Shown: positions 23,974 to 31,216 of the stretch, one piece after another | Position numbering within the stretch: position 1 is the first letter of the stretch | Layout of the letters: each line of letters starts with the position of its first letter | Source: Obrimoposthia wandeli | Taxonomy: Eukaryota | Direction: 5' to 3' | Assembly (NCBI GenBank): GCA_977020255.1 | Contig: CDROCS010002422.1 | Span: 186,001 to 250,000 of the forward strand | Length of the DNA: 64,000 nt | Notes under the pieces: generated by a model | Seen by the model: only the letters and a program-made list of their open reading frames with translations | What the model was told of the DNA's origin: nothing | Databases searched by the model: none | Made by a program: the position numbers and the translations under genes

Positions 23974-24307
23974 TAGCTTTTGCAGGTTCCAGCATATATC
24001 AGCATTGATGCACTATAGTTGTGCATGGGTACATGAAAGCTAACGACCTGAATTAGACATTTAACATGTCGAATCAACACTATTATATTCAGTGCTAGTA
24101 TTAAACGACATATCATTATAGACATTTACTCCAAAGCAGTTATCTCAATACATGATACAAGTAACATTTCTCATATATTAAACTACATTGCTCGACTATA
24201 ATGTAATAAGCTCTATTACTATCAATGGGTTCTCTATGCTGTTCAGCGCAACGATAATATTTATGAAAACAAAGGGGTTTATCGTAGAAAGTAAGTTTGA
24301 GTTTTTG

Positions 24308-25090
24308 ATGAAACCTTGGATTTCGAGCGCTATTATTGCATTAGTATTTTTATTGTCTGCACCTATCTCATTTGCCTCAGAAGAGCATCGCTGCAAAAGC
24401 GTCAAAATAAGTGGTAGCAGTAGCTGGTATCCGTTCTCATATCGAGATAGCTCCAATAATCTAAGAGGGATTGCCTACCAGGTAGCAAAAACACTCTTCA
24501 AGCGTCTGAAAATAGACCTCATAGTGGATGAGCCTCAACCGTGGAGTAGAACTATCATGGGTTTGAAACATGGCCAGCTGGATATTCTATCGGGCGCTTA
24601 TTGGAACGCTGAACGATCCGAAAAGTTTGACTTTAGCATTCCATTTTCTAGTGACGAAGTGCGGTTGTTTGTTAGAAACGATAGCCTTACAAAATACCCG
24701 GACCTTACCTCGCTACGAGGTACGACAGGAAGCAAACCTATTGGAGTGTCGCTTGGGCCTGTATTTGAAGAAACCCTCAAAAGCCATGTAAAAATCGAAT
24801 CTGTCAGCTACGAATCCATGACCAAAATGGTCTATTTTGGCAGAGTAGAATGGTTTGGTCTAGGACTATATAACGGCAAAAAACTTCTAAAAGATCTAGG
24901 GTATGAAGATGAAATTTCTCCCTTGCCATACTCAATAGAAACAACACCAGTGCATTTTATGTTATCAAAAAATTCTAATTGCAGCTCATTGCTTAAAAGA
25001 ATCAACGCGGGTTTAGAAGCACTAATAAAAGAAGGGGTGATTGAAGCAATAATTGCCAAGGAAACACAGTATCAGCAACTAAAAAAATAA
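24308..25090 (+). CDS. Periplasmic substrate-binding protein, family 3
   Basis: Signal peptide from ATG 24308, WYPFSY, PWSRTIMGLKHGQLD, YWNAERS; no adjacent permease. Confidence 0.8.
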   Translation: MKPWISSAIIALVFLLSAPISFASEEHRCKSVKISGSSSWYPFSYRDSSNNLRGIAYQVAKTLFKRLKIDLIVDEPQPWSRTIMGLKHGQLDILSGAYWNAERSEKFDFSIPFSSDEVRLFVRNDSLTKYPDLTSLRGTTGSKPIGVSLGPVFEETLKSHVKIESVSYESMTKMVYFGRVEWFGLGLYNGKKLLKDLGYEDEISPLPYSIETTPVHFMLSKNSNCSSLLKRINAGLEALIKEGVIEAIIAKETQYQQLKK

Positions 25091-25511
25091 CGTAACCTGT
25101 GCCCAATTTTCAGCAACAAAGTTTTACTTTTAAATGCACAGCGATATCTATTTAAAATAGTCCGCTTTGTATCAAGCTCAATCTTTATAACTTAATTTTT
25201 CTATATTTCGTATAAATGACCCCGTACTGACTACTGCCTCTACTGGTTGAGCTTAATTACAAGCGCTCCTTTAGTTCTGCATTCAGCTACAAACTACTTT
25301 TAGCTCTTTACTGCACACTCTATTTTTCTCAGTATTTTAAAGCCTATAATTGCCTTCTGGATGATTCAGGCAAGGCAGCCGTACCAACAACAATTTTTAC
25401 TTTTAATTCATCGTATTATCTTATGCTAATAAAAGTTGGCTATAAGAAAAAAGCGCGCTACTAAGAGCGGCTTTTCTATGCGTTTCTAGATAATATTTAC
25501 ACCGATTTATA

Positions 25512-26722: not shown

Positions 26723-26787
26723 AGGTCAAATATATTGACCTGTTGACACCTTATCTCGAATAATATATTAATGTCAATATGATTGAC
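26723..26787. promoter_or_regulatory. Two GTCAA-N5-TTGAC palindromes, putative MarR operators
   Basis: AGGTCAAATATATTGACCT (26723-26741) and GTCAATATGATTGAC (26773-26787, overlapping the marR ATG), in the divergent intergenic region. Confidence 0.7.
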
Positions 26788-27231
26788 CTAAATAAAACTC
26801 AACAAATGCACGAGGCTATCCGCCTCTTTTACTTTAGCTATCGCGTCTTTACCGAACGGGCTGACCAATTATTAGACAAACGGGGATTAAATCGCGCACA
26901 CCACCGTATTCTGTACTTCGTGGATCAAAATAGTGAGGGCTCAGTTGGCGATTTGCTCAAGACACTTGCAATTACTAAACAAGCGCTAAATACACCTCTG
27001 CGTCAGTTAATTAGCATGGGGTTGGTGGAAACATCACAAAGCAAAAAAGATAAAAGAATCAAAATACTACGACTGACGGAAAGCGGTTCACAACTAAATA
27101 GCATGTTGACGGCCACACAATTTGAATTGCTAAATTCTGTATTCGATTCAGCAGAGCCAGAAGCCGAAAATGGCTGGAAAGAAATTATGCAGCTAATTGC
27201 TAATTTAGAGAAGCAAGTCGAAAAGAAATAA
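26779..27231 (+). CDS. MarR family transcriptional regulator
   Basis: GLNRAHHRILYFV, LAITKQALNTPLRQL, DKRIKILRLTESG wing motif. Confidence 0.9.
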   Translation: MIDLNKTQQMHEAIRLFYFSYRVFTERADQLLDKRGLNRAHHRILYFVDQNSEGSVGDLLKTLAITKQALNTPLRQLISMGLVETSQSKKDKRIKILRLTESGSQLNSMLTATQFELLNSVFDSAEPEAENGWKEIMQLIANLEKQVEKK

Positions 27232-27252
27232 AATTAGAGAAGCGAGAAGAAT

Positions 27253-28566
27253 AAAGCAAAGAAGTTTTAGGTTTTGGCTTGGTTCAATGTTGTTGTTTTC
27301 TCTGTGTAGTTTAGCGTTTCTGCGCCCTCGGTGGTAAAAAATATTTTAAAAAATTGATTGACCACAGAGATCACAGAGAACACAGAGGAAAGATTTATAA
27401 CAAAGAAATTTAAGGTCTTAGTCTTGTTGAATGTTGTTATTTTCTCTGTGTAGCGCAGCGTTTCTTTGTCCTCTGTGGTAAAAAAGCTTTTAAAATATTG
27501 ATTGACCACAGAGGTCACAGAGAGCACTGAGGAAAGATTTACAACAAAGCAATTTAAGATTTTGGTCTTGTTGAATGTTGTTATTTTCTCTGTGTAGCAC
27601 AGCGCCTCTGTGTCCTCGGTGGTAAAAAAGCTTTTAAAATATTGATAGACCACAGAGGTCACAAAGAGCACTGAGGAAAGATTTACAACAAAGCAATTTA
27701 AGATTTTGGTCTTGTTGAATGTTGTTATTTTCTCTGTGTAGCGCAGCGTCTCTTTGTTCTCGGTGGTAAAAATGCTTTTAAAAAATTGATAGACAACAGA
27801 GGTCACAGAGAGCACTGAAGAAAGATTTAAAACAAAGGAACTTAAAATTTTGGTCTTGTTGAATGTTGTTATTTTCTCTGTGTAGCGCAGCGTTTCTTTG
27901 TCCTCGGTGGTAAAAATGCTTTTAAAAAATTGATAGACAACAGAGGTCACAGAGAGCACTGAAGAAAGATTTAAAACAAAGGAACTTAAAATTTTGGTCT
28001 TGTTGAATGTTGTTATTTTCTCTGTGTAGCGCAGCGTCTCTGTGTCCTCGGTGGTAAAAAAGCTTTTAAAATACTGATTAAACACAGAGAACACAGAGGT
28101 AAGACTTAACACAAAGGAATTTAAGATTTTGGCCTTGTTGAATGTTGTTGTTTTCTCTGTGTAGCACAGCGCCTCTGTGTCCTCGGTGATAGGAAAGCTT
28201 TTAAAATATTGATTGACCACAAAGGTCACAGAGAGCACTCAGGAAAGATTTACAACAAAGGAACTTAAAATTTTGGTCTTGTTGAATGTTGTTATTTTCT
28301 CTGTGTAGCGCAGCGTCTCTGTGTCCTCGGTGGTAAAAAAGCTTTTAAAATATTGATAGACCACTGGGGTCACAGAGAGCACTCAGGAAAGATTTACCAC
28401 AAAGGAATTTAAGATTTTGGTTTTGTTGAATGTTGTTATTTTCACTGTGTAGCGCAGCGTCTCTTTGTCTTCGGTGGTAAAAAAGCTTTTAAACTATTAA
28501 TTAACCACAGAGGTCACAGAGAAAACACTTAAAGCAAAGACATTTAAGGTTTTGGTCTTGTTCAAT
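27253..28566. repeat. Tandem array of nine 144-bp (two are 135-bp) hairpin-containing units
   Basis: Anchor AATGTTGTT at 27286, 27430, 27574, 27718, 27862, 28006, 28141, 28285, 28429; each unit carries CTCTGTGTCCTCGGTGGT...ACCACAGAGGTCACAGAG inverted arms. Confidence 0.95.
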
Positions 28567-28975
28567 AATTATTGTTTGAGTTGCGTATTAGCAGCTCCGT
28601 ATTAACACTAGAATTACTCAATTAGGTATTCAAATTAGCAGAATTCGAAGCTGAAAATAACTAGAAAAAATAATGCAGCCCATTGCTCATTTAGAGGAGC
28701 TAAATTCAGTAACGCCAAAAAATATAATTGGATTTTTCGAAGAATATAATGACAAACACCTAACGTATACACACCATCAGACACTATTCCTGTAGTCGAG
28801 TAATAAAAATTCACACTGAATGCATTCTAACTAAATTATAAGGTATGTTCCGAACAATAAAGTTGCATACTAGAATGCTATTAAATTACCAAAAAATCCT
28901 AGTTTGACGGAGGCTGGTCTCGGCCAAAAGCGGTCATTTCCATATCTATTTTAAAGGAGCTACCTATGACATAAG

Positions 28976-29003
28976 TAACATTTAACATTTAACATTTAAC
29001 GTT
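28976..29003. repeat. Heptamer tandem repeat (TAACATT)3 TAACGTT
   Basis: Read directly from the sequence. Confidence 0.85.
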
Positions 29004-29121
29004 TTCTGTATAACTGTGCGCGTATACACATAGAATATTAGAATGAGTTCGTGTTTACACTTGTAGCTTCTTAAAAACAGTGATATCAACAATTTAAATG
29101 CTAACATAAGAATTCAAAAGT

Positions 29122-29397
29122 ATGGATAATATAATTGAGAAGTCAAGATTGATTGCAGAAACTAAGGAAGGCGCAATGCAATGTGGAGGTACATATTCTT
29201 CACACAATCTACAAATATGCCTTTCGTTACTTAAAGAATTAGAGGCCTATCAAGATCATCAAAAATATAAAAGAGTACTTAGTTCGTTGCTTTTAATAAA
29301 AGATAATTGGCAGTCAGCTCTTATAAATCATAATTCCAGTAGCTATCATTTCATTAAATATGACATTGAAACAGGCTTACCATTAAAACCTGAATAA
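29122..29397 (+). CDS. Small AT-rich hypothetical protein, probable cassette remnant
   Basis: 91-aa ORF just upstream of an attC-like site; may be truncated. Confidence 0.5.
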   Translation: MDNIIEKSRLIAETKEGAMQCGGTYSSHNLQICLSLLKELEAYQDHQKYKRVLSSLLLIKDNWQSALINHNSSSYHFIKYDIETGLPLKPE

Positions 29398-29441
29398 ACG
29401 AAATTGTATAATGTTAGCTTTTGTAAGAAATGTAGAAAAAA

Positions 29442-29553
29442 GAATAACAAGCGCGTGCACAAGGGGCTAAAAAATCGCCACACTTTTGGTATAGCAGAGC
29501 CACTATACGCTTAAAATCCCACTCCAATTTAGCCTGTGATGCGGGCAGAAAAT
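29442..29553 (+). other. Degenerate attC site (R' core lost)
   Basis: R'' GAATAAC, 5-nt spacer, L'' CGTGCACA pairing with L' TGTGATG with an extrahelical G at position 4, extended stem GGCTAAA/TTTAGCC, spacer CGGGC, then AGAAAAT instead of GTTRRRY. Confidence 0.7.
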
Positions 29554-29977
29554 GAATAGTAAGGCTGAAATGAAACATAATTACATAGTAGTAACTGTAT
29601 ACACATTTTGTTTTTCACTTTCAACGATAGGTGTCTGGTATTTATCACCTAATATTTTAGGTATATCTATAAAAGATATTACTAGCGTTTTAGTTAGCGC
29701 TTTAATTGGAGCTTTTTTTGTTATCAAGATTAAGTGGTTAGATGAATTTGCAGAGCCTAAATTCACCGCAGGAATTAAATTCGCTGCGTTGTCCACACTA
29801 GTGTTAATTATAGTGAATCAATTACCTCCTTTTGACACTGTTGAGGGAAATTTAGATAGTCACTTATATGGTGCAGCCATGTACGCTTTAATAGCATTTA
29901 TTGTTTCATTAGTTGTAATGCCTGTTTGCGGAATTTCAGGCATGATAATGAAAAAGTTTAACAAGCTAAATAAGTAA
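29552..29977 (+). CDS. Four-TM hypothetical membrane protein, integron-cassette-like
   Basis: 141-aa ORF lying between two attC-like sites; its stop codon falls inside the second site. Confidence 0.7.
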   Translation: MNSKAEMKHNYIVVTVYTFCFSLSTIGVWYLSPNILGISIKDITSVLVSALIGAFFVIKIKWLDEFAEPKFTAGIKFAALSTLVLIIVNQLPPFDTVEGNLDSHLYGAAMYALIAFIVSLVVMPVCGISGMIMKKFNKLNK

Positions 29978-30027
29978 GGCACTGCCCGCTGGAGGCGTTC
30001 TACTCGACCTCTTTTGAGGCGTTATTT
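29956..30027 (+). other. attC-like site (72 bp)
   Basis: R'' GTTTAAC (perfect RYYYAAC), spacer AAGCT, L'' AAATAAGT...; CTCTTTT, spacer GAGGC, R' GTTATTT. Confidence 0.65.
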
Positions 30028-30091
30028 TATGTCCAAGATGTCTGCTTTGTGTCAATTTCAGTATTTTCATTTCTAAGCAGTATTAAATAAT

Positions 30092-30454
30092 ATGTATATA
30101 AAGCTTATATCACTAGTCAGTTTACTCATAGTAATAACATTTTTATCATATAAAGCTAATTCAATAGCTGAGGATTATTTTAAGCATGATTTCGAATTTC
30201 AAAAAAACGTCAGTCAGAAAATGGATGACGTTGTAAATAGTTATAGCGATATAGAAAGAAATAGTGAATACAATGATAAAGTACTTGGTTTTTTTGAAGT
30301 CGTTCTAGCTAGAGATTTGGAACATTTTACTATTTTGAAAATATTAGATTATGTGTATTTGGTTTACATAGTTATGATGCTTCTAATCTTTTCTTTAATC
30401 TGGGAGACAATTAAGGAAGAAAGGAAAAGAAAAGAAAAGAAAAGAAAAGATTAA
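30092..30454 (+). CDS. Two-TM hypothetical membrane protein, cassette-like
   Basis: 120-aa, very AT-rich, starts 65 bp after attC R'; basic C-terminus encoded by (GAAAA)5. Confidence 0.6.
   Translation: MYIKLISLVSLLIVITFLSYKANSIAEDYFKHDFEFQKNVSQKMDDVVNSYSDIERNSEYNDKVLGFFEVVLARDLEHFTILKILDYVYLVYIVMMLLIFSLIWETIKEERKRKEKKRKD
30424..30450. repeat. (GAAAA)5GA microsatellite
   Basis: Read directly; lies in the last codons of ORF 30092-30454. Confidence 0.85.
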
Positions 30455-30574
30455 AATAAAGACAAGAGGTGTAGCAAGTAAGAGGTTTATACAGGGCAGT
30501 CATAGATTAGTTGGTTAGCCATTTTGAGCCCAAAGCCTCGTTGGTGGGGTTTTGGGCGTATATTTGATAAATAT

Positions 30575-31123
30575 AAAAAATCTCGGCCGCAAGCGACCGA
30601 GTTTTTAGAACAGCCCGAGCTGCTTACTATTTAATTCACTTTTGTTCATGACCAATAGTTGGTCTTGAACATATTTTCGTATTACTTCTTCGCTAGCATT
30701 TCCAATTGTTTCCACGAAATAACTTTGAGTCCACAGCTTCCCTCCCCAGAAATACTTCTTTTTTATAGCGGGGTGTAATCGAAAAAACTCCCGAGCCGAA
30801 ATACTTTTAATGACTTGCATCACATGAGATGGTGCTATTTTTGGATCTGTTCGTACTACCATATGAATATGATCAACTGGTATTTCAAGCTCTATAATTT
30901 CTATATCGTAGTCATATCCAATTTTTTGGATAATTGCTTTAAGATCAGCTCTAAATGGCTCAACAAATACTTTATGGCGATACTTTGGAATCCAAACAAA
31001 ATGATACATTAATCTGAAAACATGGTGTGAATTTCGATATAACTCCATAAGCTGAATACCCCACAATGACTTCGTCATTGTACGCTATCCAGCTCGGGGG
31101 CAAGCCCCCGAGATTTACGCTAT
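30575..31123 (-). mobile_element. IS200-type element (tnpA only) with subterminal hairpins
   Basis: Hairpins CTCGGCCGC-AA-GCGACCGAG (30582-30601) and CTCGGGGGC-AA-GCCCCCGAG (31093-31112) bracket tnpA; exact ends not determined. Confidence 0.8.
30605..31078 (-). CDS. tnpA: IS200/IS605 family Y1 HUH transposase
   Basis: YHFVWIPKYR, DHIH (HUH), KSISAR, LWTQSYFV, YVQDQ (catalytic Tyr, YxxxQ); start may be ATG 31048. Confidence 0.95.
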   Translation of the reverse strand: MTKSLWGIQLMELYRNSHHVFRLMYHFVWIPKYRHKVFVEPFRADLKAIIQKIGYDYDIEIIELEIPVDHIHMVVRTDPKIAPSHVMQVIKSISAREFFRLHPAIKKKYFWGGKLWTQSYFVETIGNASEEVIRKYVQDQLLVMNKSELNSKQLGLF

Positions 31124-31216
31124 GCGGTTAAAATGGCCGCATTGTGTCATTTGCAAACACTTATAAGCACGAACAGCGCTTATCCAGTATGACACTTTAA
31201 TACTCGATTACACTTC

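What the first reader, a model, noticed from the sequence alone, without database searches (positions are those of the whole stretch)
27253..28566. Hairpin-unit tandem array (9 x 144/135 bp) built from 9-bp subrepeats, directly behind marR
Seen in sequence: the period is exactly 144 bp, except two units that are 9 bp shorter. Each unit has a left arm of 9-mers (ctctgtgta-gcgcagcgt-ctctgtgtc-ctcggtggt), an AT-rich loop containing AAAAGCTTTT, and a complementary right arm of 9-mers (accacagag-gtcacagag-agcactgag). The shortening in the 28006 unit removes one 9-mer equivalent. GTGTAG is invariant in all nine units. Units at 27718 and 27862 are almost identical, suggesting recent duplication. The two ends share a distinct ~36-bp variant (AAAGCAAAGA...GGTTTTGG...TTCAAT at 27253-27288 and 28531-28566) that internal units lack. 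No unique spacers are present. Inference: a REPIN/BIME-like non-autonomous element amplified in tandem, which would extrude ssDNA or RNA hairpins. From memory (unverified), ACCACAGAG/CTCTGTGGT arm pairs flank GxxExxY-family nuclease genes in other bacteria, so these could be gene-less versions mobilised in trans. With no other terminator after marR, the array may be transcribed as a multi-hairpin RNA.
Basis: partly seen in the sequence, partly recalled or inferred. Interest (0 to 1): 0.8.

Follow-up and report, generated by a model that had tools for sequence, protein, structure and literature searches.

The report
Tandemly amplified REP-like hairpin repeat
The nine-unit array behind marR is real: it is a non-coding, hairpin-forming repeat from an apparently undescribed REP/BIME-like family found patchily in a few cold-marine Gammaproteobacteria, expanded here from one unit to nine, with an unusual conserved mini-hairpin core but no identified enzyme that moves it.

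Summary
Window 27252-28566 is a spacer-less array of nine 144-bp units, two of them about 9 bp shorter, starting 21 nt after a MarR gene.

The window is a bacterial (Oceanospirillaceae-like) contig inside a 1.35-Gb assembly. The sister genome has a single unit flanked by two linker copies at the same locus, so the array is a local expansion.

The unit belongs to a dispersed mosaic family built on a 34-36-nt module with an almost invariant GCGNAGC core:
- 35 copies in this assembly and 3 to at least 164 in eleven other genomes (Oceanospirillaceae/Nitrincolaceae, Colwellia, Pseudoalteromonas)
- none in 35 of 41 relatives, in 400 sampled genomes of the class, or in viral contigs
- tandem arrays with periods of 74-466 bp are common

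The arms pair in 89.5% of cells, but through sequence conservation, with no covariation above shuffles. G·T pairs outnumber A·C 88:21, so the top strand is probably the one that folds.

No RAYT, IS200, Y1-like or GxxExxY gene is bracketed by the module. Similar CACNGAG arms do flank GxxExxY genes in an unrelated low-GC bacterium of the same assembly.

Verdict: a new family of REP/BIME-like intergenic repeats, amplified by recombination or slippage. Mobiliser and function are unknown. Another first-stage note (s1-220532) describes hairpin-repeat arrays elsewhere in this genome.

The parts
26779..27231 (+). MarR-family regulator gene immediately upstream. The array starts 21 nt after its stop codon and is co-oriented with it.
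   Evidence: ORF. Pfam MarR_2, HTH_27 and MarR. 94% identical orthologue in G001.
27252..28566 (+). The whole array: nine head-to-tail units (linker plus hairpin) and a closing linker, with no spacers.
   Evidence: TRF, anchors, unit identity matrix.
27252..27395 (+). Unit 1. It is the most diverged unit, and its left linker is the old 5' flank of the element.
   Evidence: 74-85% identity to the other units. End-linker comparison.
27396..27971 (+). Units 2-5, each 144 bp. They include the closest pair, 27684 and 27828, at 95.8% identity.
27972..28106 (+). Unit 6, 135 bp. One 9-nt period of the 3' arm is missing.
   Evidence: Anchor spacing of 135; sequence.
28107..28394 (+). Units 7-8, each 144 bp. 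In unit 8 the inner stem closes with G·T wobbles on the top strand only (right arm ACCACTGGGG).
   Evidence: Sequence. DNA folds of top versus bottom strand: -17.7 versus -15.7 kcal/mol.
28395..28530 (+). Unit 9. It is truncated and lacks the third 3'-arm heptad.
28531..28566 (+). Closing linker. This is the old 3' flank of the element and is homologous to the right linker of the single unit in the sister genome.
   Evidence: 80.4% identity to the right linker of L054 and 84.8% to the left end linker.
28299..28334 (+). Example of the conserved 36-nt 5'-arm module: CTCTGTG-TA-GCGNAGC-G-nCTCTGTGn-CCTCKGTGGT. This is the family's defining sequence.
   Evidence: Exact pattern match at G000:C2422:214301-214334. 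Family alignments A1 and A2.
28308..28314 (+). GCGCAGC, the GCGNAGC mini-hairpin motif inside the 5' arm. Only the N varies across the family.
   Evidence: Column counts: G 44/44, C 43/44, G 41/44, N = C 27 / A 17, A 43/44, G 44/44, C 44/44. Motif definition from PMC13037366.
28600..28705 (+). Decayed second copy of the last ~105 bp of marR. The repeat element therefore sits between two direct copies of the gene's 3' end, and the same arrangement is present in the sister genome.
   Evidence: Alignment A3; BLAST.

Best explanation
The array is a locally expanded copy of a non-coding mosaic intergenic repeat of the REP/BIME (MITE-like) kind.

Each unit has four parts:
- a highly conserved 36-nt 5' arm (CTCTGTG-TA-GCGNAGC-G-CTCTGTG-n-CCTCKGTGGT)
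- an AT-rich loop of about 25 nt
- a looser 3' arm of CACNGAG heptads
- a linker of about 55 nt that forms a small hairpin of its own

Shown:
- The ancestral state at this locus was one hairpin flanked by two similar linker copies, as in the sister species.
- Inner units are more alike than outer ones.
- A second orthologous locus also differs in unit number between the two species.
- Arrays with locus-specific periods are common in the family.

Inferred:
- The array grew from one unit to nine by unequal recombination or replication slippage between the directly repeated linkers, with homogenisation of the inner units.
- The top strand (the sense strand of marR) is the strand that folds. It would form a long imperfect hairpin with a GCGNAGC mini-hairpin branching from the 5' arm and one mismatch in the middle of each heptad. 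It would fold either as ssDNA or as the 3' untranslated tail of the marR transcript.
- The family reached unrelated marine lineages by horizontal transfer and is multiplied by a trans-acting factor that has not been identified.
For: - Orthologous locus: L054 (flanking genes 87-91% identical) carries one unit against nine here.
- Second locus: the C2469 array has 5.6 units against two modules in its orthologue L039, with flanks 92% and 85% identical.
- Unit divergence: outer units are the most diverged. The end linkers match the sister genome's flanking linkers.
- Dispersal: 35 copies in this assembly; 13, 82, 16, 23 and 3 in G001-G005; 164 and 121 in G009 and G014. Only 6 of 41 relatives have any copy, and none of the 400 other genomes sampled across the class does. 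The reversed control pattern finds 0 throughout.
- Host range: named hosts span Oceanospirillaceae/Nitrincolaceae and Oleispira MAGs, Colwellia and Pseudoalteromonas.
- Mosaic make-up and arrays: periods of 74, 86 to 466 bp.
- Pairing: 89.5% of cells paired, against 37-62% when partners are slid.
- Strand: G·T 88 versus A·C 21.
- Orientation: upstream gene on the same strand 40 times versus 13, downstream gene 24 versus 26.
- Non-coding: the 323-aa minus-strand ORF is not kept in other arrays, and only its close paralogue on C2469 has a comparable open frame. It has no credible Pfam match.
- No Rfam family matches.
Against: - No compensatory changes. The covariation score of 0.066 is below the shuffled mean of 0.077, so structure is not shown to be selected independently of sequence.
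- No transposase or nuclease is associated in cis.
- No target-site duplication or clean empty site was found, so mobility is inferred only from the dispersed and patchy distribution.
- Orientation relative to GC skew is inconsistent overall: 30 concordant versus 18 discordant, p = 0.11.
- There is no expression data.
- The copy number of nine is not independently confirmed.
Confidence: 0.62

Rival explanations
1. REP/REPIN proper. The module would be the ssDNA substrate of a trans-acting HUH/Y1 tyrosine transposase (a RAYT or a relative). That enzyme would recognise the GTAG plus mini-hairpin on the folded top strand and paste copies next to existing ones, building the arrays.
For: - GTAG (GCAG in some lineages) lies in the conserved core directly 5' of the mini-hairpin.
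- Top-strand wobble bias.
- Inverted doublets about 95 nt apart exist on C5434.
- In one genome (G002), 17 of 18 loci have the module on the G-rich strand (my reading of the rows).
- All six module-bearing relatives carry a multi-copy 340-aa Y1-like gene, which scores 41 bits on the RAYT model.
Against: - No RAYT-model hit is flanked by the module.
- Only 2 of 17 copies of the Y1-like gene have a module nearby. The gene sits in its own element with inverted ends AGGACAGaCA, seen in most copies, and is also present in 13 module-free genomes.
- The palindrome next to GTAG is only 2-3 bp, unlike canonical REPs.
- Strand bias is not consistent across genomes.
Confidence: 0.2
2. A functional RNA. 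The array would be transcribed from marR as a multi-hairpin 3' UTR, or processed into unit-length sRNAs, that stabilises or attenuates the upstream message or sponges a factor.
For: - Copies lie 18-100 nt after stop codons and are co-oriented with the upstream gene 40:13.
- G·U-compatible pairs favour the sense strand.
- No strong terminator lies between marR and the array.
Against: - No promoter-like site lies inside the units, and the only terminator-like sites are weak 5-bp stems.
- No covariation.
- No Rfam match.
- A quarter of copies are antisense to the upstream gene.
- No RNA-seq run holds the locus.
Confidence: 0.1
3. Gene-less derivatives of hairpin-bracketed GxxExxY (PD-(D/E)XK) nuclease cassettes, mobilised by that nuclease.
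For: GxxExxY genes on 30%-GC contigs of the same assembly are bracketed by inverted arms made of the same CACAGAG / CGCAGAG / CACTGAG heptads.
Against: - No GxxExxY gene in five module-bearing genomes.
- Those arms have a 10-nt period and no GCGNAGC core.
- Five of the seven GxxExxY loci lack the heptads.
- The carriers are a different, low-GC organism.
Confidence: 0.04
4. A repeat protein encoded on the minus strand (ORF 27267-28238, 323 aa). All unit lengths are multiples of 3.
For: - The ORF exists.
- The paralogous C2469 array has a 221-aa minus-strand ORF.
Against: - Open frames in the other six arrays checked reach only 53-98 aa.
- Pfam matches have no significant stretch.
- It starts with GTG inside the array.
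- A 144-nt unit with one open frame gives a long ORF automatically.
Confidence: 0.02
5. An assembly artefact: a shorter array over-expanded by the assembler.
For: No public contig spans the array.
Against: - Units differ by unit-specific substitutions and an indel.
- Arrays of this family occur in complete, independently assembled genomes.
- Both flanks match public unitigs exactly.
Confidence: 0.02

Closest known systems
E. coli BIMEs (bacterial interspersed mosaic elements built from REP/PU motifs; BIME-2 tandem clusters)
   Same: - Extragenic.
- Mosaic of one conserved palindromic motif combined with variable linker motifs.
- Found singly, in pairs and as head-to-tail clusters.
- Often sits just after a stop codon.
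- Copy number varies between close relatives.
   Different: - No sequence similarity.
- The conserved motif here is an asymmetric 36-nt arm with an embedded GCGNAGC mini-hairpin, inside a roughly 100-nt hairpin.
- The family is shared almost unchanged by different orders but is missing from most relatives.
- No RAYT partner was found.
REP/REPIN-RAYT systems (Pseudomonas REPINs, Stenotrophomonas SMAG repeats with a 5' GTAG)
   Same: - GTAG-type tetranucleotide in the conserved core.
- Tens to hundreds of intergenic copies.
- Some inverted doublets.
- Tandem arrays occur.
   Different: - The defining cognate RAYT gene flanked by the repeat was sought and not found.
- The stem next to GTAG is only 2-3 bp.
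- Canonical REPs are species-specific, whereas this module is near-identical across orders.
MITEs such as Neisseria Correia elements and enterobacterial ERIC/IRU
   Same: - 100-150-bp hairpin-forming, non-autonomous repeats.
- Often co-transcribed with neighbouring genes.
   Different: - No terminal inverted repeats with a target-site duplication could be defined.
- No parent IS was found.
- Strong tendency to form tandem arrays.
Integron attC sites (Vibrio cholerae repeats)
   Same: - Imperfect hairpins of about 120 bp, read on one strand as folded ssDNA.
- Mismatched or extrahelical bases at fixed places.
- Locally the same orientation.
   Different: - Genes between neighbouring copies are ordinary in size and mixed in orientation.
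- No GTTRRRY / RYYYAAC boxes were recognised by eye in the unit; no pattern scan was run.
- In the window the units follow each other with no cassette between them.
Mini-hairpin DNA GCGNAGC (phage G4 origin, ssiA priming signal, N4 early promoters; review PMC13037366)
   Same: The almost invariant heart of the module is exactly GCGNAGC, and only N varies.
   Different: Those sites are single functional ssDNA signals. Here the motif sits in a dispersed and tandemly amplified repeat, and neither its folding nor any function has been tested.
Tandem sRNA gene arrays (for example NsiR1 in Anabaena; recalled from my own knowledge)
   Same: Head-to-tail repeats of about 100-150 bp, each with a hairpin.
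   Different: Units here have no promoter or terminator of their own, and the family is dispersed in up to 164 or more copies.

Membership tests
REP/REPIN-RAYT | Many (tens to hundreds of) extragenic copies per genome | tested here: met
   35, 82, 121 and 164 copies in different genomes, with reversed-pattern controls at 0. 62 of 64 copy clusters lie between predicted ORFs.
REP/REPIN-RAYT | Short imperfect palindrome headed by a conserved GTAG | tested here: inconclusive
   GTAG or GCAG is conserved. However, the adjacent palindrome is only the 2-3-bp GCGNAGC mini-hairpin, and the large hairpin is about 100 nt long.
REP/REPIN-RAYT | A cognate RAYT gene flanked by the repeat | tested here: not met
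   Twenty RAYT-model hits in five genomes were cut out as loci. Only L099, a sub-threshold Y1-like gene, has modules nearby, and these lie downstream only. The window's Y1 gene is a true IS200: 150 bits on the IS200 model against 22 bits on the RAYT model.
BIME-like mosaic repeat | A conserved palindromic unit combined with variable motifs, occurring singly and in tandem clusters | tested here: met
   The same module is found with different linkers, loops and added hairpins in Oceanospirillaceae, Colwellia and Pseudoalteromonas. Array periods range from 74 to 466 bp.
MITE | Terminal inverted repeats plus a target-site duplication, and a related autonomous IS | tested here: not met
   No recurrent flank duplication. 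No clean empty site. No IS shares the arms.
Integron attC / cassette array | Repeats separating small co-oriented cassettes, with an integrase nearby | tested here: not met
   Genes between copies are of normal size and mixed orientation. The units in the window have nothing between them. An integrase was not searched for.
CRISPR array | Short repeats separated by unique spacers | tested here: not met
   There are no spacers and the whole 144 bp repeats.
Tandem sRNA gene array | A promoter and a terminator in every unit | tested here: not met
   No promoter-like site inside the array. Only weak 5-bp terminator-like stems, in four units.
Any Rfam family | A match at the gathering score | tested here: not met
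   The only hits are to a microRNA model at 23-30 bits, against a gathering score of 90.
GxxExxY cassette derivative | A GxxExxY gene with the same arms present in the same genomes | tested here: not met
   0 of 5 module-bearing genomes have TIGR04256. Arms with similar heptads flank the gene only in an unrelated 30%-GC organism.

The most novel reading that the evidence does not exclude
The 36-nt module could be the folded single-strand recognition site of an undescribed mobilisation or priming system.
- It would form a top-strand three-way structure with a GCGNAGC mini-hairpin and one mismatch per CTCNGTG/CACNGAG heptad.
- The same heptad arms bracket GxxExxY nuclease genes in a distant phylum. 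The window array would then be the gene-less form of a widespread, unrecognised class of hairpin-bracketed cassettes.
Probability: 0.12. Interest if true: 0.75.

Novelty: new variant of a known kind. Interest (0 to 1): 0.45.

Why it matters
Intergenic repeat families such as REP, BIME and MITEs shape bacterial genomes and mRNA fate, but most were described in a few model organisms.

This family is unusual in three ways:
- A 34-36-nt arm is nearly identical across different orders of marine bacteria, yet it is missing from most of their relatives.
- Its conserved heart is the extraordinarily stable mini-hairpin motif GCGNAGC.
- It readily grows into tandem arrays whose length differs between sister species.

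If the enzyme or host factor that reads the module were found, it could reveal a new single-strand DNA or RNA recognition mechanism. It might also explain similar arms around small nuclease genes elsewhere. If not, this remains one more repeat family, useful mainly as a strain marker and as a cause of assembly breaks.

Tried and rejected
- Rfam scan at E <= 1: only spurious microRNA hits.
- IS200 at 30605-31078 as partner: a genuine IS200 with its own flanking hairpins. It lies inside a 2.4-kb insertion that the sister genome lacks.
- GxxExxY as mobiliser: absent from five module-bearing genomes.
- RAYT-model hits: not flanked by the module.
- 340-aa Y1-like multi-copy gene: present in all six module-positive relatives but also in 13 module-negative ones. 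It has its own inverted ends, and only 2 of 17 copies have a module nearby.
- Cargo between facing arms in about 0.7 Mb of fetched loci: nothing recurrent.
- Integron-like cassette reading of the same-strand clusters: rejected.
- Orientation versus GC skew: 30:18, not significant.
- Long flank duplication as a general insertion signature: found only at the marR locus.
- Empty-site search: the marR orthologue is found only in G001, and the C2469:284375 copy gives no clean empty site.
- Literature search for the 13-mers of the module: no paper found. A search for REP or REPIN work on Colwellia or Pseudoalteromonas found nothing relevant.
- Phage and viral carriers: none. The only 'plasmid' hits are 0.8-Mb Pseudoalteromonas replicons.
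- RNA evidence: no RNA run holds the locus.
- Read laying: the unitigs do not span the array.

Full report
**What is there**

Window 27252-28566 is a head-to-tail array. TRF reports period 144, 8.9 copies, 89% matches and a score of 1879. GTGTAG occurs once per unit, spaced 144 x5, 135, 144, 144. The last unit also lacks one 9-nt period of its 3' arm. There are no spacers.

The array begins 21 nt after the stop codon of a 150-aa MarR-family gene at 26779-27231. Units are 74-96% identical. The outermost units are the most diverged, and units 4 and 5 are the closest pair at 95.8%.

Each unit folds into a long imperfect hairpin plus a small linker hairpin. As RNA, five of six folds tested give z = -2.1 to -3.9 and one gives -0.05. 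As DNA, z = -3.5 to -4.2 for window units.

**Where the window comes from**

The assembly has 1.35 Gb in 6912 contigs. The window, however, is gene-dense bacterial DNA at 40% GC.

Locus L054, from an Oceanospirillaceae MAG (9NakV-11), is collinear with the window at 87-91% nucleotide identity. The window is therefore a contig of a congeneric marine bacterium carried in a eukaryote-sized assembly. An ice metagenome also holds related sequence.

**The array is a local expansion**

- L054 has one hairpin flanked by a linker copy on each side, where the window has nine units.
- The window's two end linkers resemble each other (84.8%) and the right linker of L054 (80.4%) more than they resemble the internal linkers.
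- A second array in the same bacterium, on C2469 with 5.6 units, is orthologous to a two-unit locus in that MAG.

A hairpin lying between two direct linker copies is a ready substrate for unequal recombination or slippage. Together with the homogenised inner units, this is the most economical account of how the array grew. This step is inferred.

**The family**

Other copies share a 34-36-nt module, CTCTGTG-YA-GCGNAGC-G-nn-TCTGTG-nn-CTCKGTGGT (alignments A1 and A2).

Copy numbers, allowing up to 3 mismatches:

| Genome | Copies |
|---|---|
| This assembly (15 contigs) | 35 |
| G001 | 13 |
| G002 | 82 |
| G003 (Colwellia maritima) | 16 |
| G004 (Pseudoalteromonas rhizosphaerae) | 23 |
| G005 | 3 |
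| G009 | 164 |
| G014 | 121 |

- The reversed control pattern gives 0 everywhere.
- Only 6 of 41 relatives of G001 have the module.
- None of the 400 other genomes drawn evenly from the class has it.
- No viral contig or phage has it.
- An exact-pattern scan of 185,579 species genomes found it only in Pseudoalteromonas, Colwellia, and Oceanospirillaceae/Nitrincolaceae and Oleispira MAGs.

Near-identity across orders combined with a patchy presence argues for horizontal spread.

The family is mosaic:
- Colwellia units carry an extra small hairpin whose variants look compensatory by eye.
- Pseudoalteromonas units are 215 bp long and include a classical GTAG-type REP.
- Copies in G002 are flanked by heptamer microsatellites.
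- One Colwellia array has a 74-bp period.

The complete genome G009 has many arrays, with periods of 86-466 bp. Tandem growth is therefore a family trait.

**Structure**

I tested my explicit structure on 44 units from the window assembly and at least four other genomes. It has an outer stem, a GCGNAGC branch, a middle stem and an inner stem.

- 89.5% of cells pair, against 37-62% when partners are slid.
- Covariation does not exceed shuffles: 0.066 against a shuffled mean of 0.077. Both arms are conserved as sequence, and nothing shows selection on pairing as such.
- The middle base of each CTCNGTG/CACNGAG heptad pair is often or usually mismatched, in 39/44, 26/43 and 15/41 sequences.
- G·T pairs outnumber A·C 88:21. 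This favours folding of the top strand, as RNA or as ssDNA, although a few columns dominate the count and the copies are related.
- The core is GCGNAGC with only N variable (C 27, A 17 in the alignment; T also occurs elsewhere in the family). This is the published consensus of the extraordinarily stable mini-hairpin DNA, known from ssDNA priming sites and N4 promoters (PMC13037366). That it folds here is my inference.

**Context**

Copies sit in intergenic DNA, often 18-100 nt after a stop codon. They are co-oriented with the upstream gene 40:13, whereas the downstream gene is on the same strand 24 times against 26. Orientation against GC skew is 30:18, not significant, although in G002 it is 17 of 18. 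The units contain no promoter-like sites, and the only terminator-like sites are weak 5-bp stems.

**Search for a partner gene**

- The IS200 at 30605-31078 is an ordinary IS200 (150 bits on the IS200 model, 22 bits on the RAYT model). It has its own hairpins and lies in a 2.4-kb segment that the sister genome lacks.
- Five module-bearing genomes have no GxxExxY gene.
- RAYT-model hits are not flanked by the module.
- A 340-aa Y1-like gene scores 41 bits on the RAYT model. It is multi-copy in all six module-positive relatives but also in 13 negatives. It sits in its own element with inverted ends in most copies, and only 2 of 17 copies have a module nearby.
- No recurrent cargo lies between facing arms.
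- Genes between same-strand copies are not cassettes.

On 30%-GC contigs of the same assembly, two GxxExxY loci are bracketed by inverted arms made of CACAGAG, CGCAGAG and CACTGAG heptads. The resemblance is at the level of the heptad, in a different organism, and those arms lack the GCGNAGC core.

**Rivals**

- The 323-aa minus-strand ORF is a by-product of unit lengths divisible by 3. Open frames in the other arrays are short, apart from the close paralogue on C2469.
- An sRNA array is unlikely without promoters or terminators in the units.
- An assembly artefact is unlikely, given the unit-specific differences and the arrays in complete genomes. The count of nine was not independently confirmed, because public unitigs do not span the array.

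**Comparison with known systems and verdict**

It works like a BIME/REP cluster. It fails the REP-RAYT membership test on the cognate gene, and the MITE test on ends and target duplication. It matches neither attC, nor CRISPR, nor any Rfam family.

No paper in the library contains the module's 13-mers. I class it as a new variant of a known kind and rate it of moderate interest. The distinctive points are the mini-hairpin core, the regular heptad mismatches, and the cross-order conservation with a patchy distribution. The mobiliser and the function remain open.

An earlier first-stage note on this genome (s1-220532) describes tandem arrays sharing one hairpin repeat with locus-specific linkers. 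That agrees with what I saw on C2469, C6408 and C2027.

Noticed in passing
window 28600-28705 (and L054:5867-5958): A decayed direct copy of the last ~105 bp of marR lies downstream of the repeat element in both sister genomes, so the element sits between two copies of the gene's 3' end. This pattern was not seen at other insertion sites. Its origin is unexplained: a long target duplication, or a tandem duplication.
   Followed up: partly
window 28791-31214: A 2.4-kb segment that the sister genome lacks. It holds three small ORFs with no Pfam or NCBIfam match (29122-29397, 29552-29977, 30092-30454) and an IS200 (30605-31078, minus strand) flanked by its own GC-rich hairpins.
   Followed up: partly
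window 23982-25511: A solute-binding protein gene (SBP_bac_3, 24188-25090) is present here but absent from the orthologous position in L054.
   Followed up: no
L099:683-1696, L095, L084, L108-L127 (G001, G002, G009, G014 and others): A multi-copy 337-341-aa protein with an HUH-like SNHYHLVL motif. It scores 41 bits on the RAYT model and has no Pfam hit. It sits in an element of about 1.35 kb with conserved ends and inverted termini AGGACAGaCA, and many pseudogenised fragments exist. It looks like an undescribed IS-like family and is not linked to the hairpin module.
   Followed up: partly
L034, L036, L050-L052, L059-L066 (G002): In this MAG the hairpin element is regularly flanked by heptamer microsatellites: (AGCTAAA)n or (AGCTAGA)n or (GTCGTTA)n upstream, and (GCTCACA)n or (GCTCACC)n downstream of a conserved spacer of about 60 nt.
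   Followed up: no
L030, L032, L037, L105 (Colwellia maritima): The Colwellia variant of the unit carries an extra small stem-loop in its 3' arm. Its variants (GGCC..GGCC, GGAC..GTCC, AGGC..GCCT) look compensatory by eye, unlike the main stems.
   Followed up: no
L064:2558-2741: A 74-bp-period array in Candidatus Colwellia aromaticivorans. It joins the module to a different widespread-looking motif (...CATCCTGAGCTTGTCGAAGGG).
   Followed up: no
L073:1380-1910 and L078:1400-1700 (G000 contigs C372, C361; 30% GC): GxxExxY (TIGR04256) genes of a low-GC bacterium in the same assembly are bracketed by inverted arms of 10-nt-period CACAGAG / CGCAGAG heptads. One of the two genes is a fragment.
   Followed up: partly
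L067:1990-2165 and L068:2015-2185 (G000:C5434): REPIN-like inverted doublets of the module (reverse-complement copy, about 95 nt, forward copy) lying between genes.
   Followed up: no
window 28976-29004 and 30417-30450: Small microsatellites, (TAACATT)x4 and (AAGAA)x7. The second lies at the 3' end of the ORF 30092-30454.
   Followed up: no
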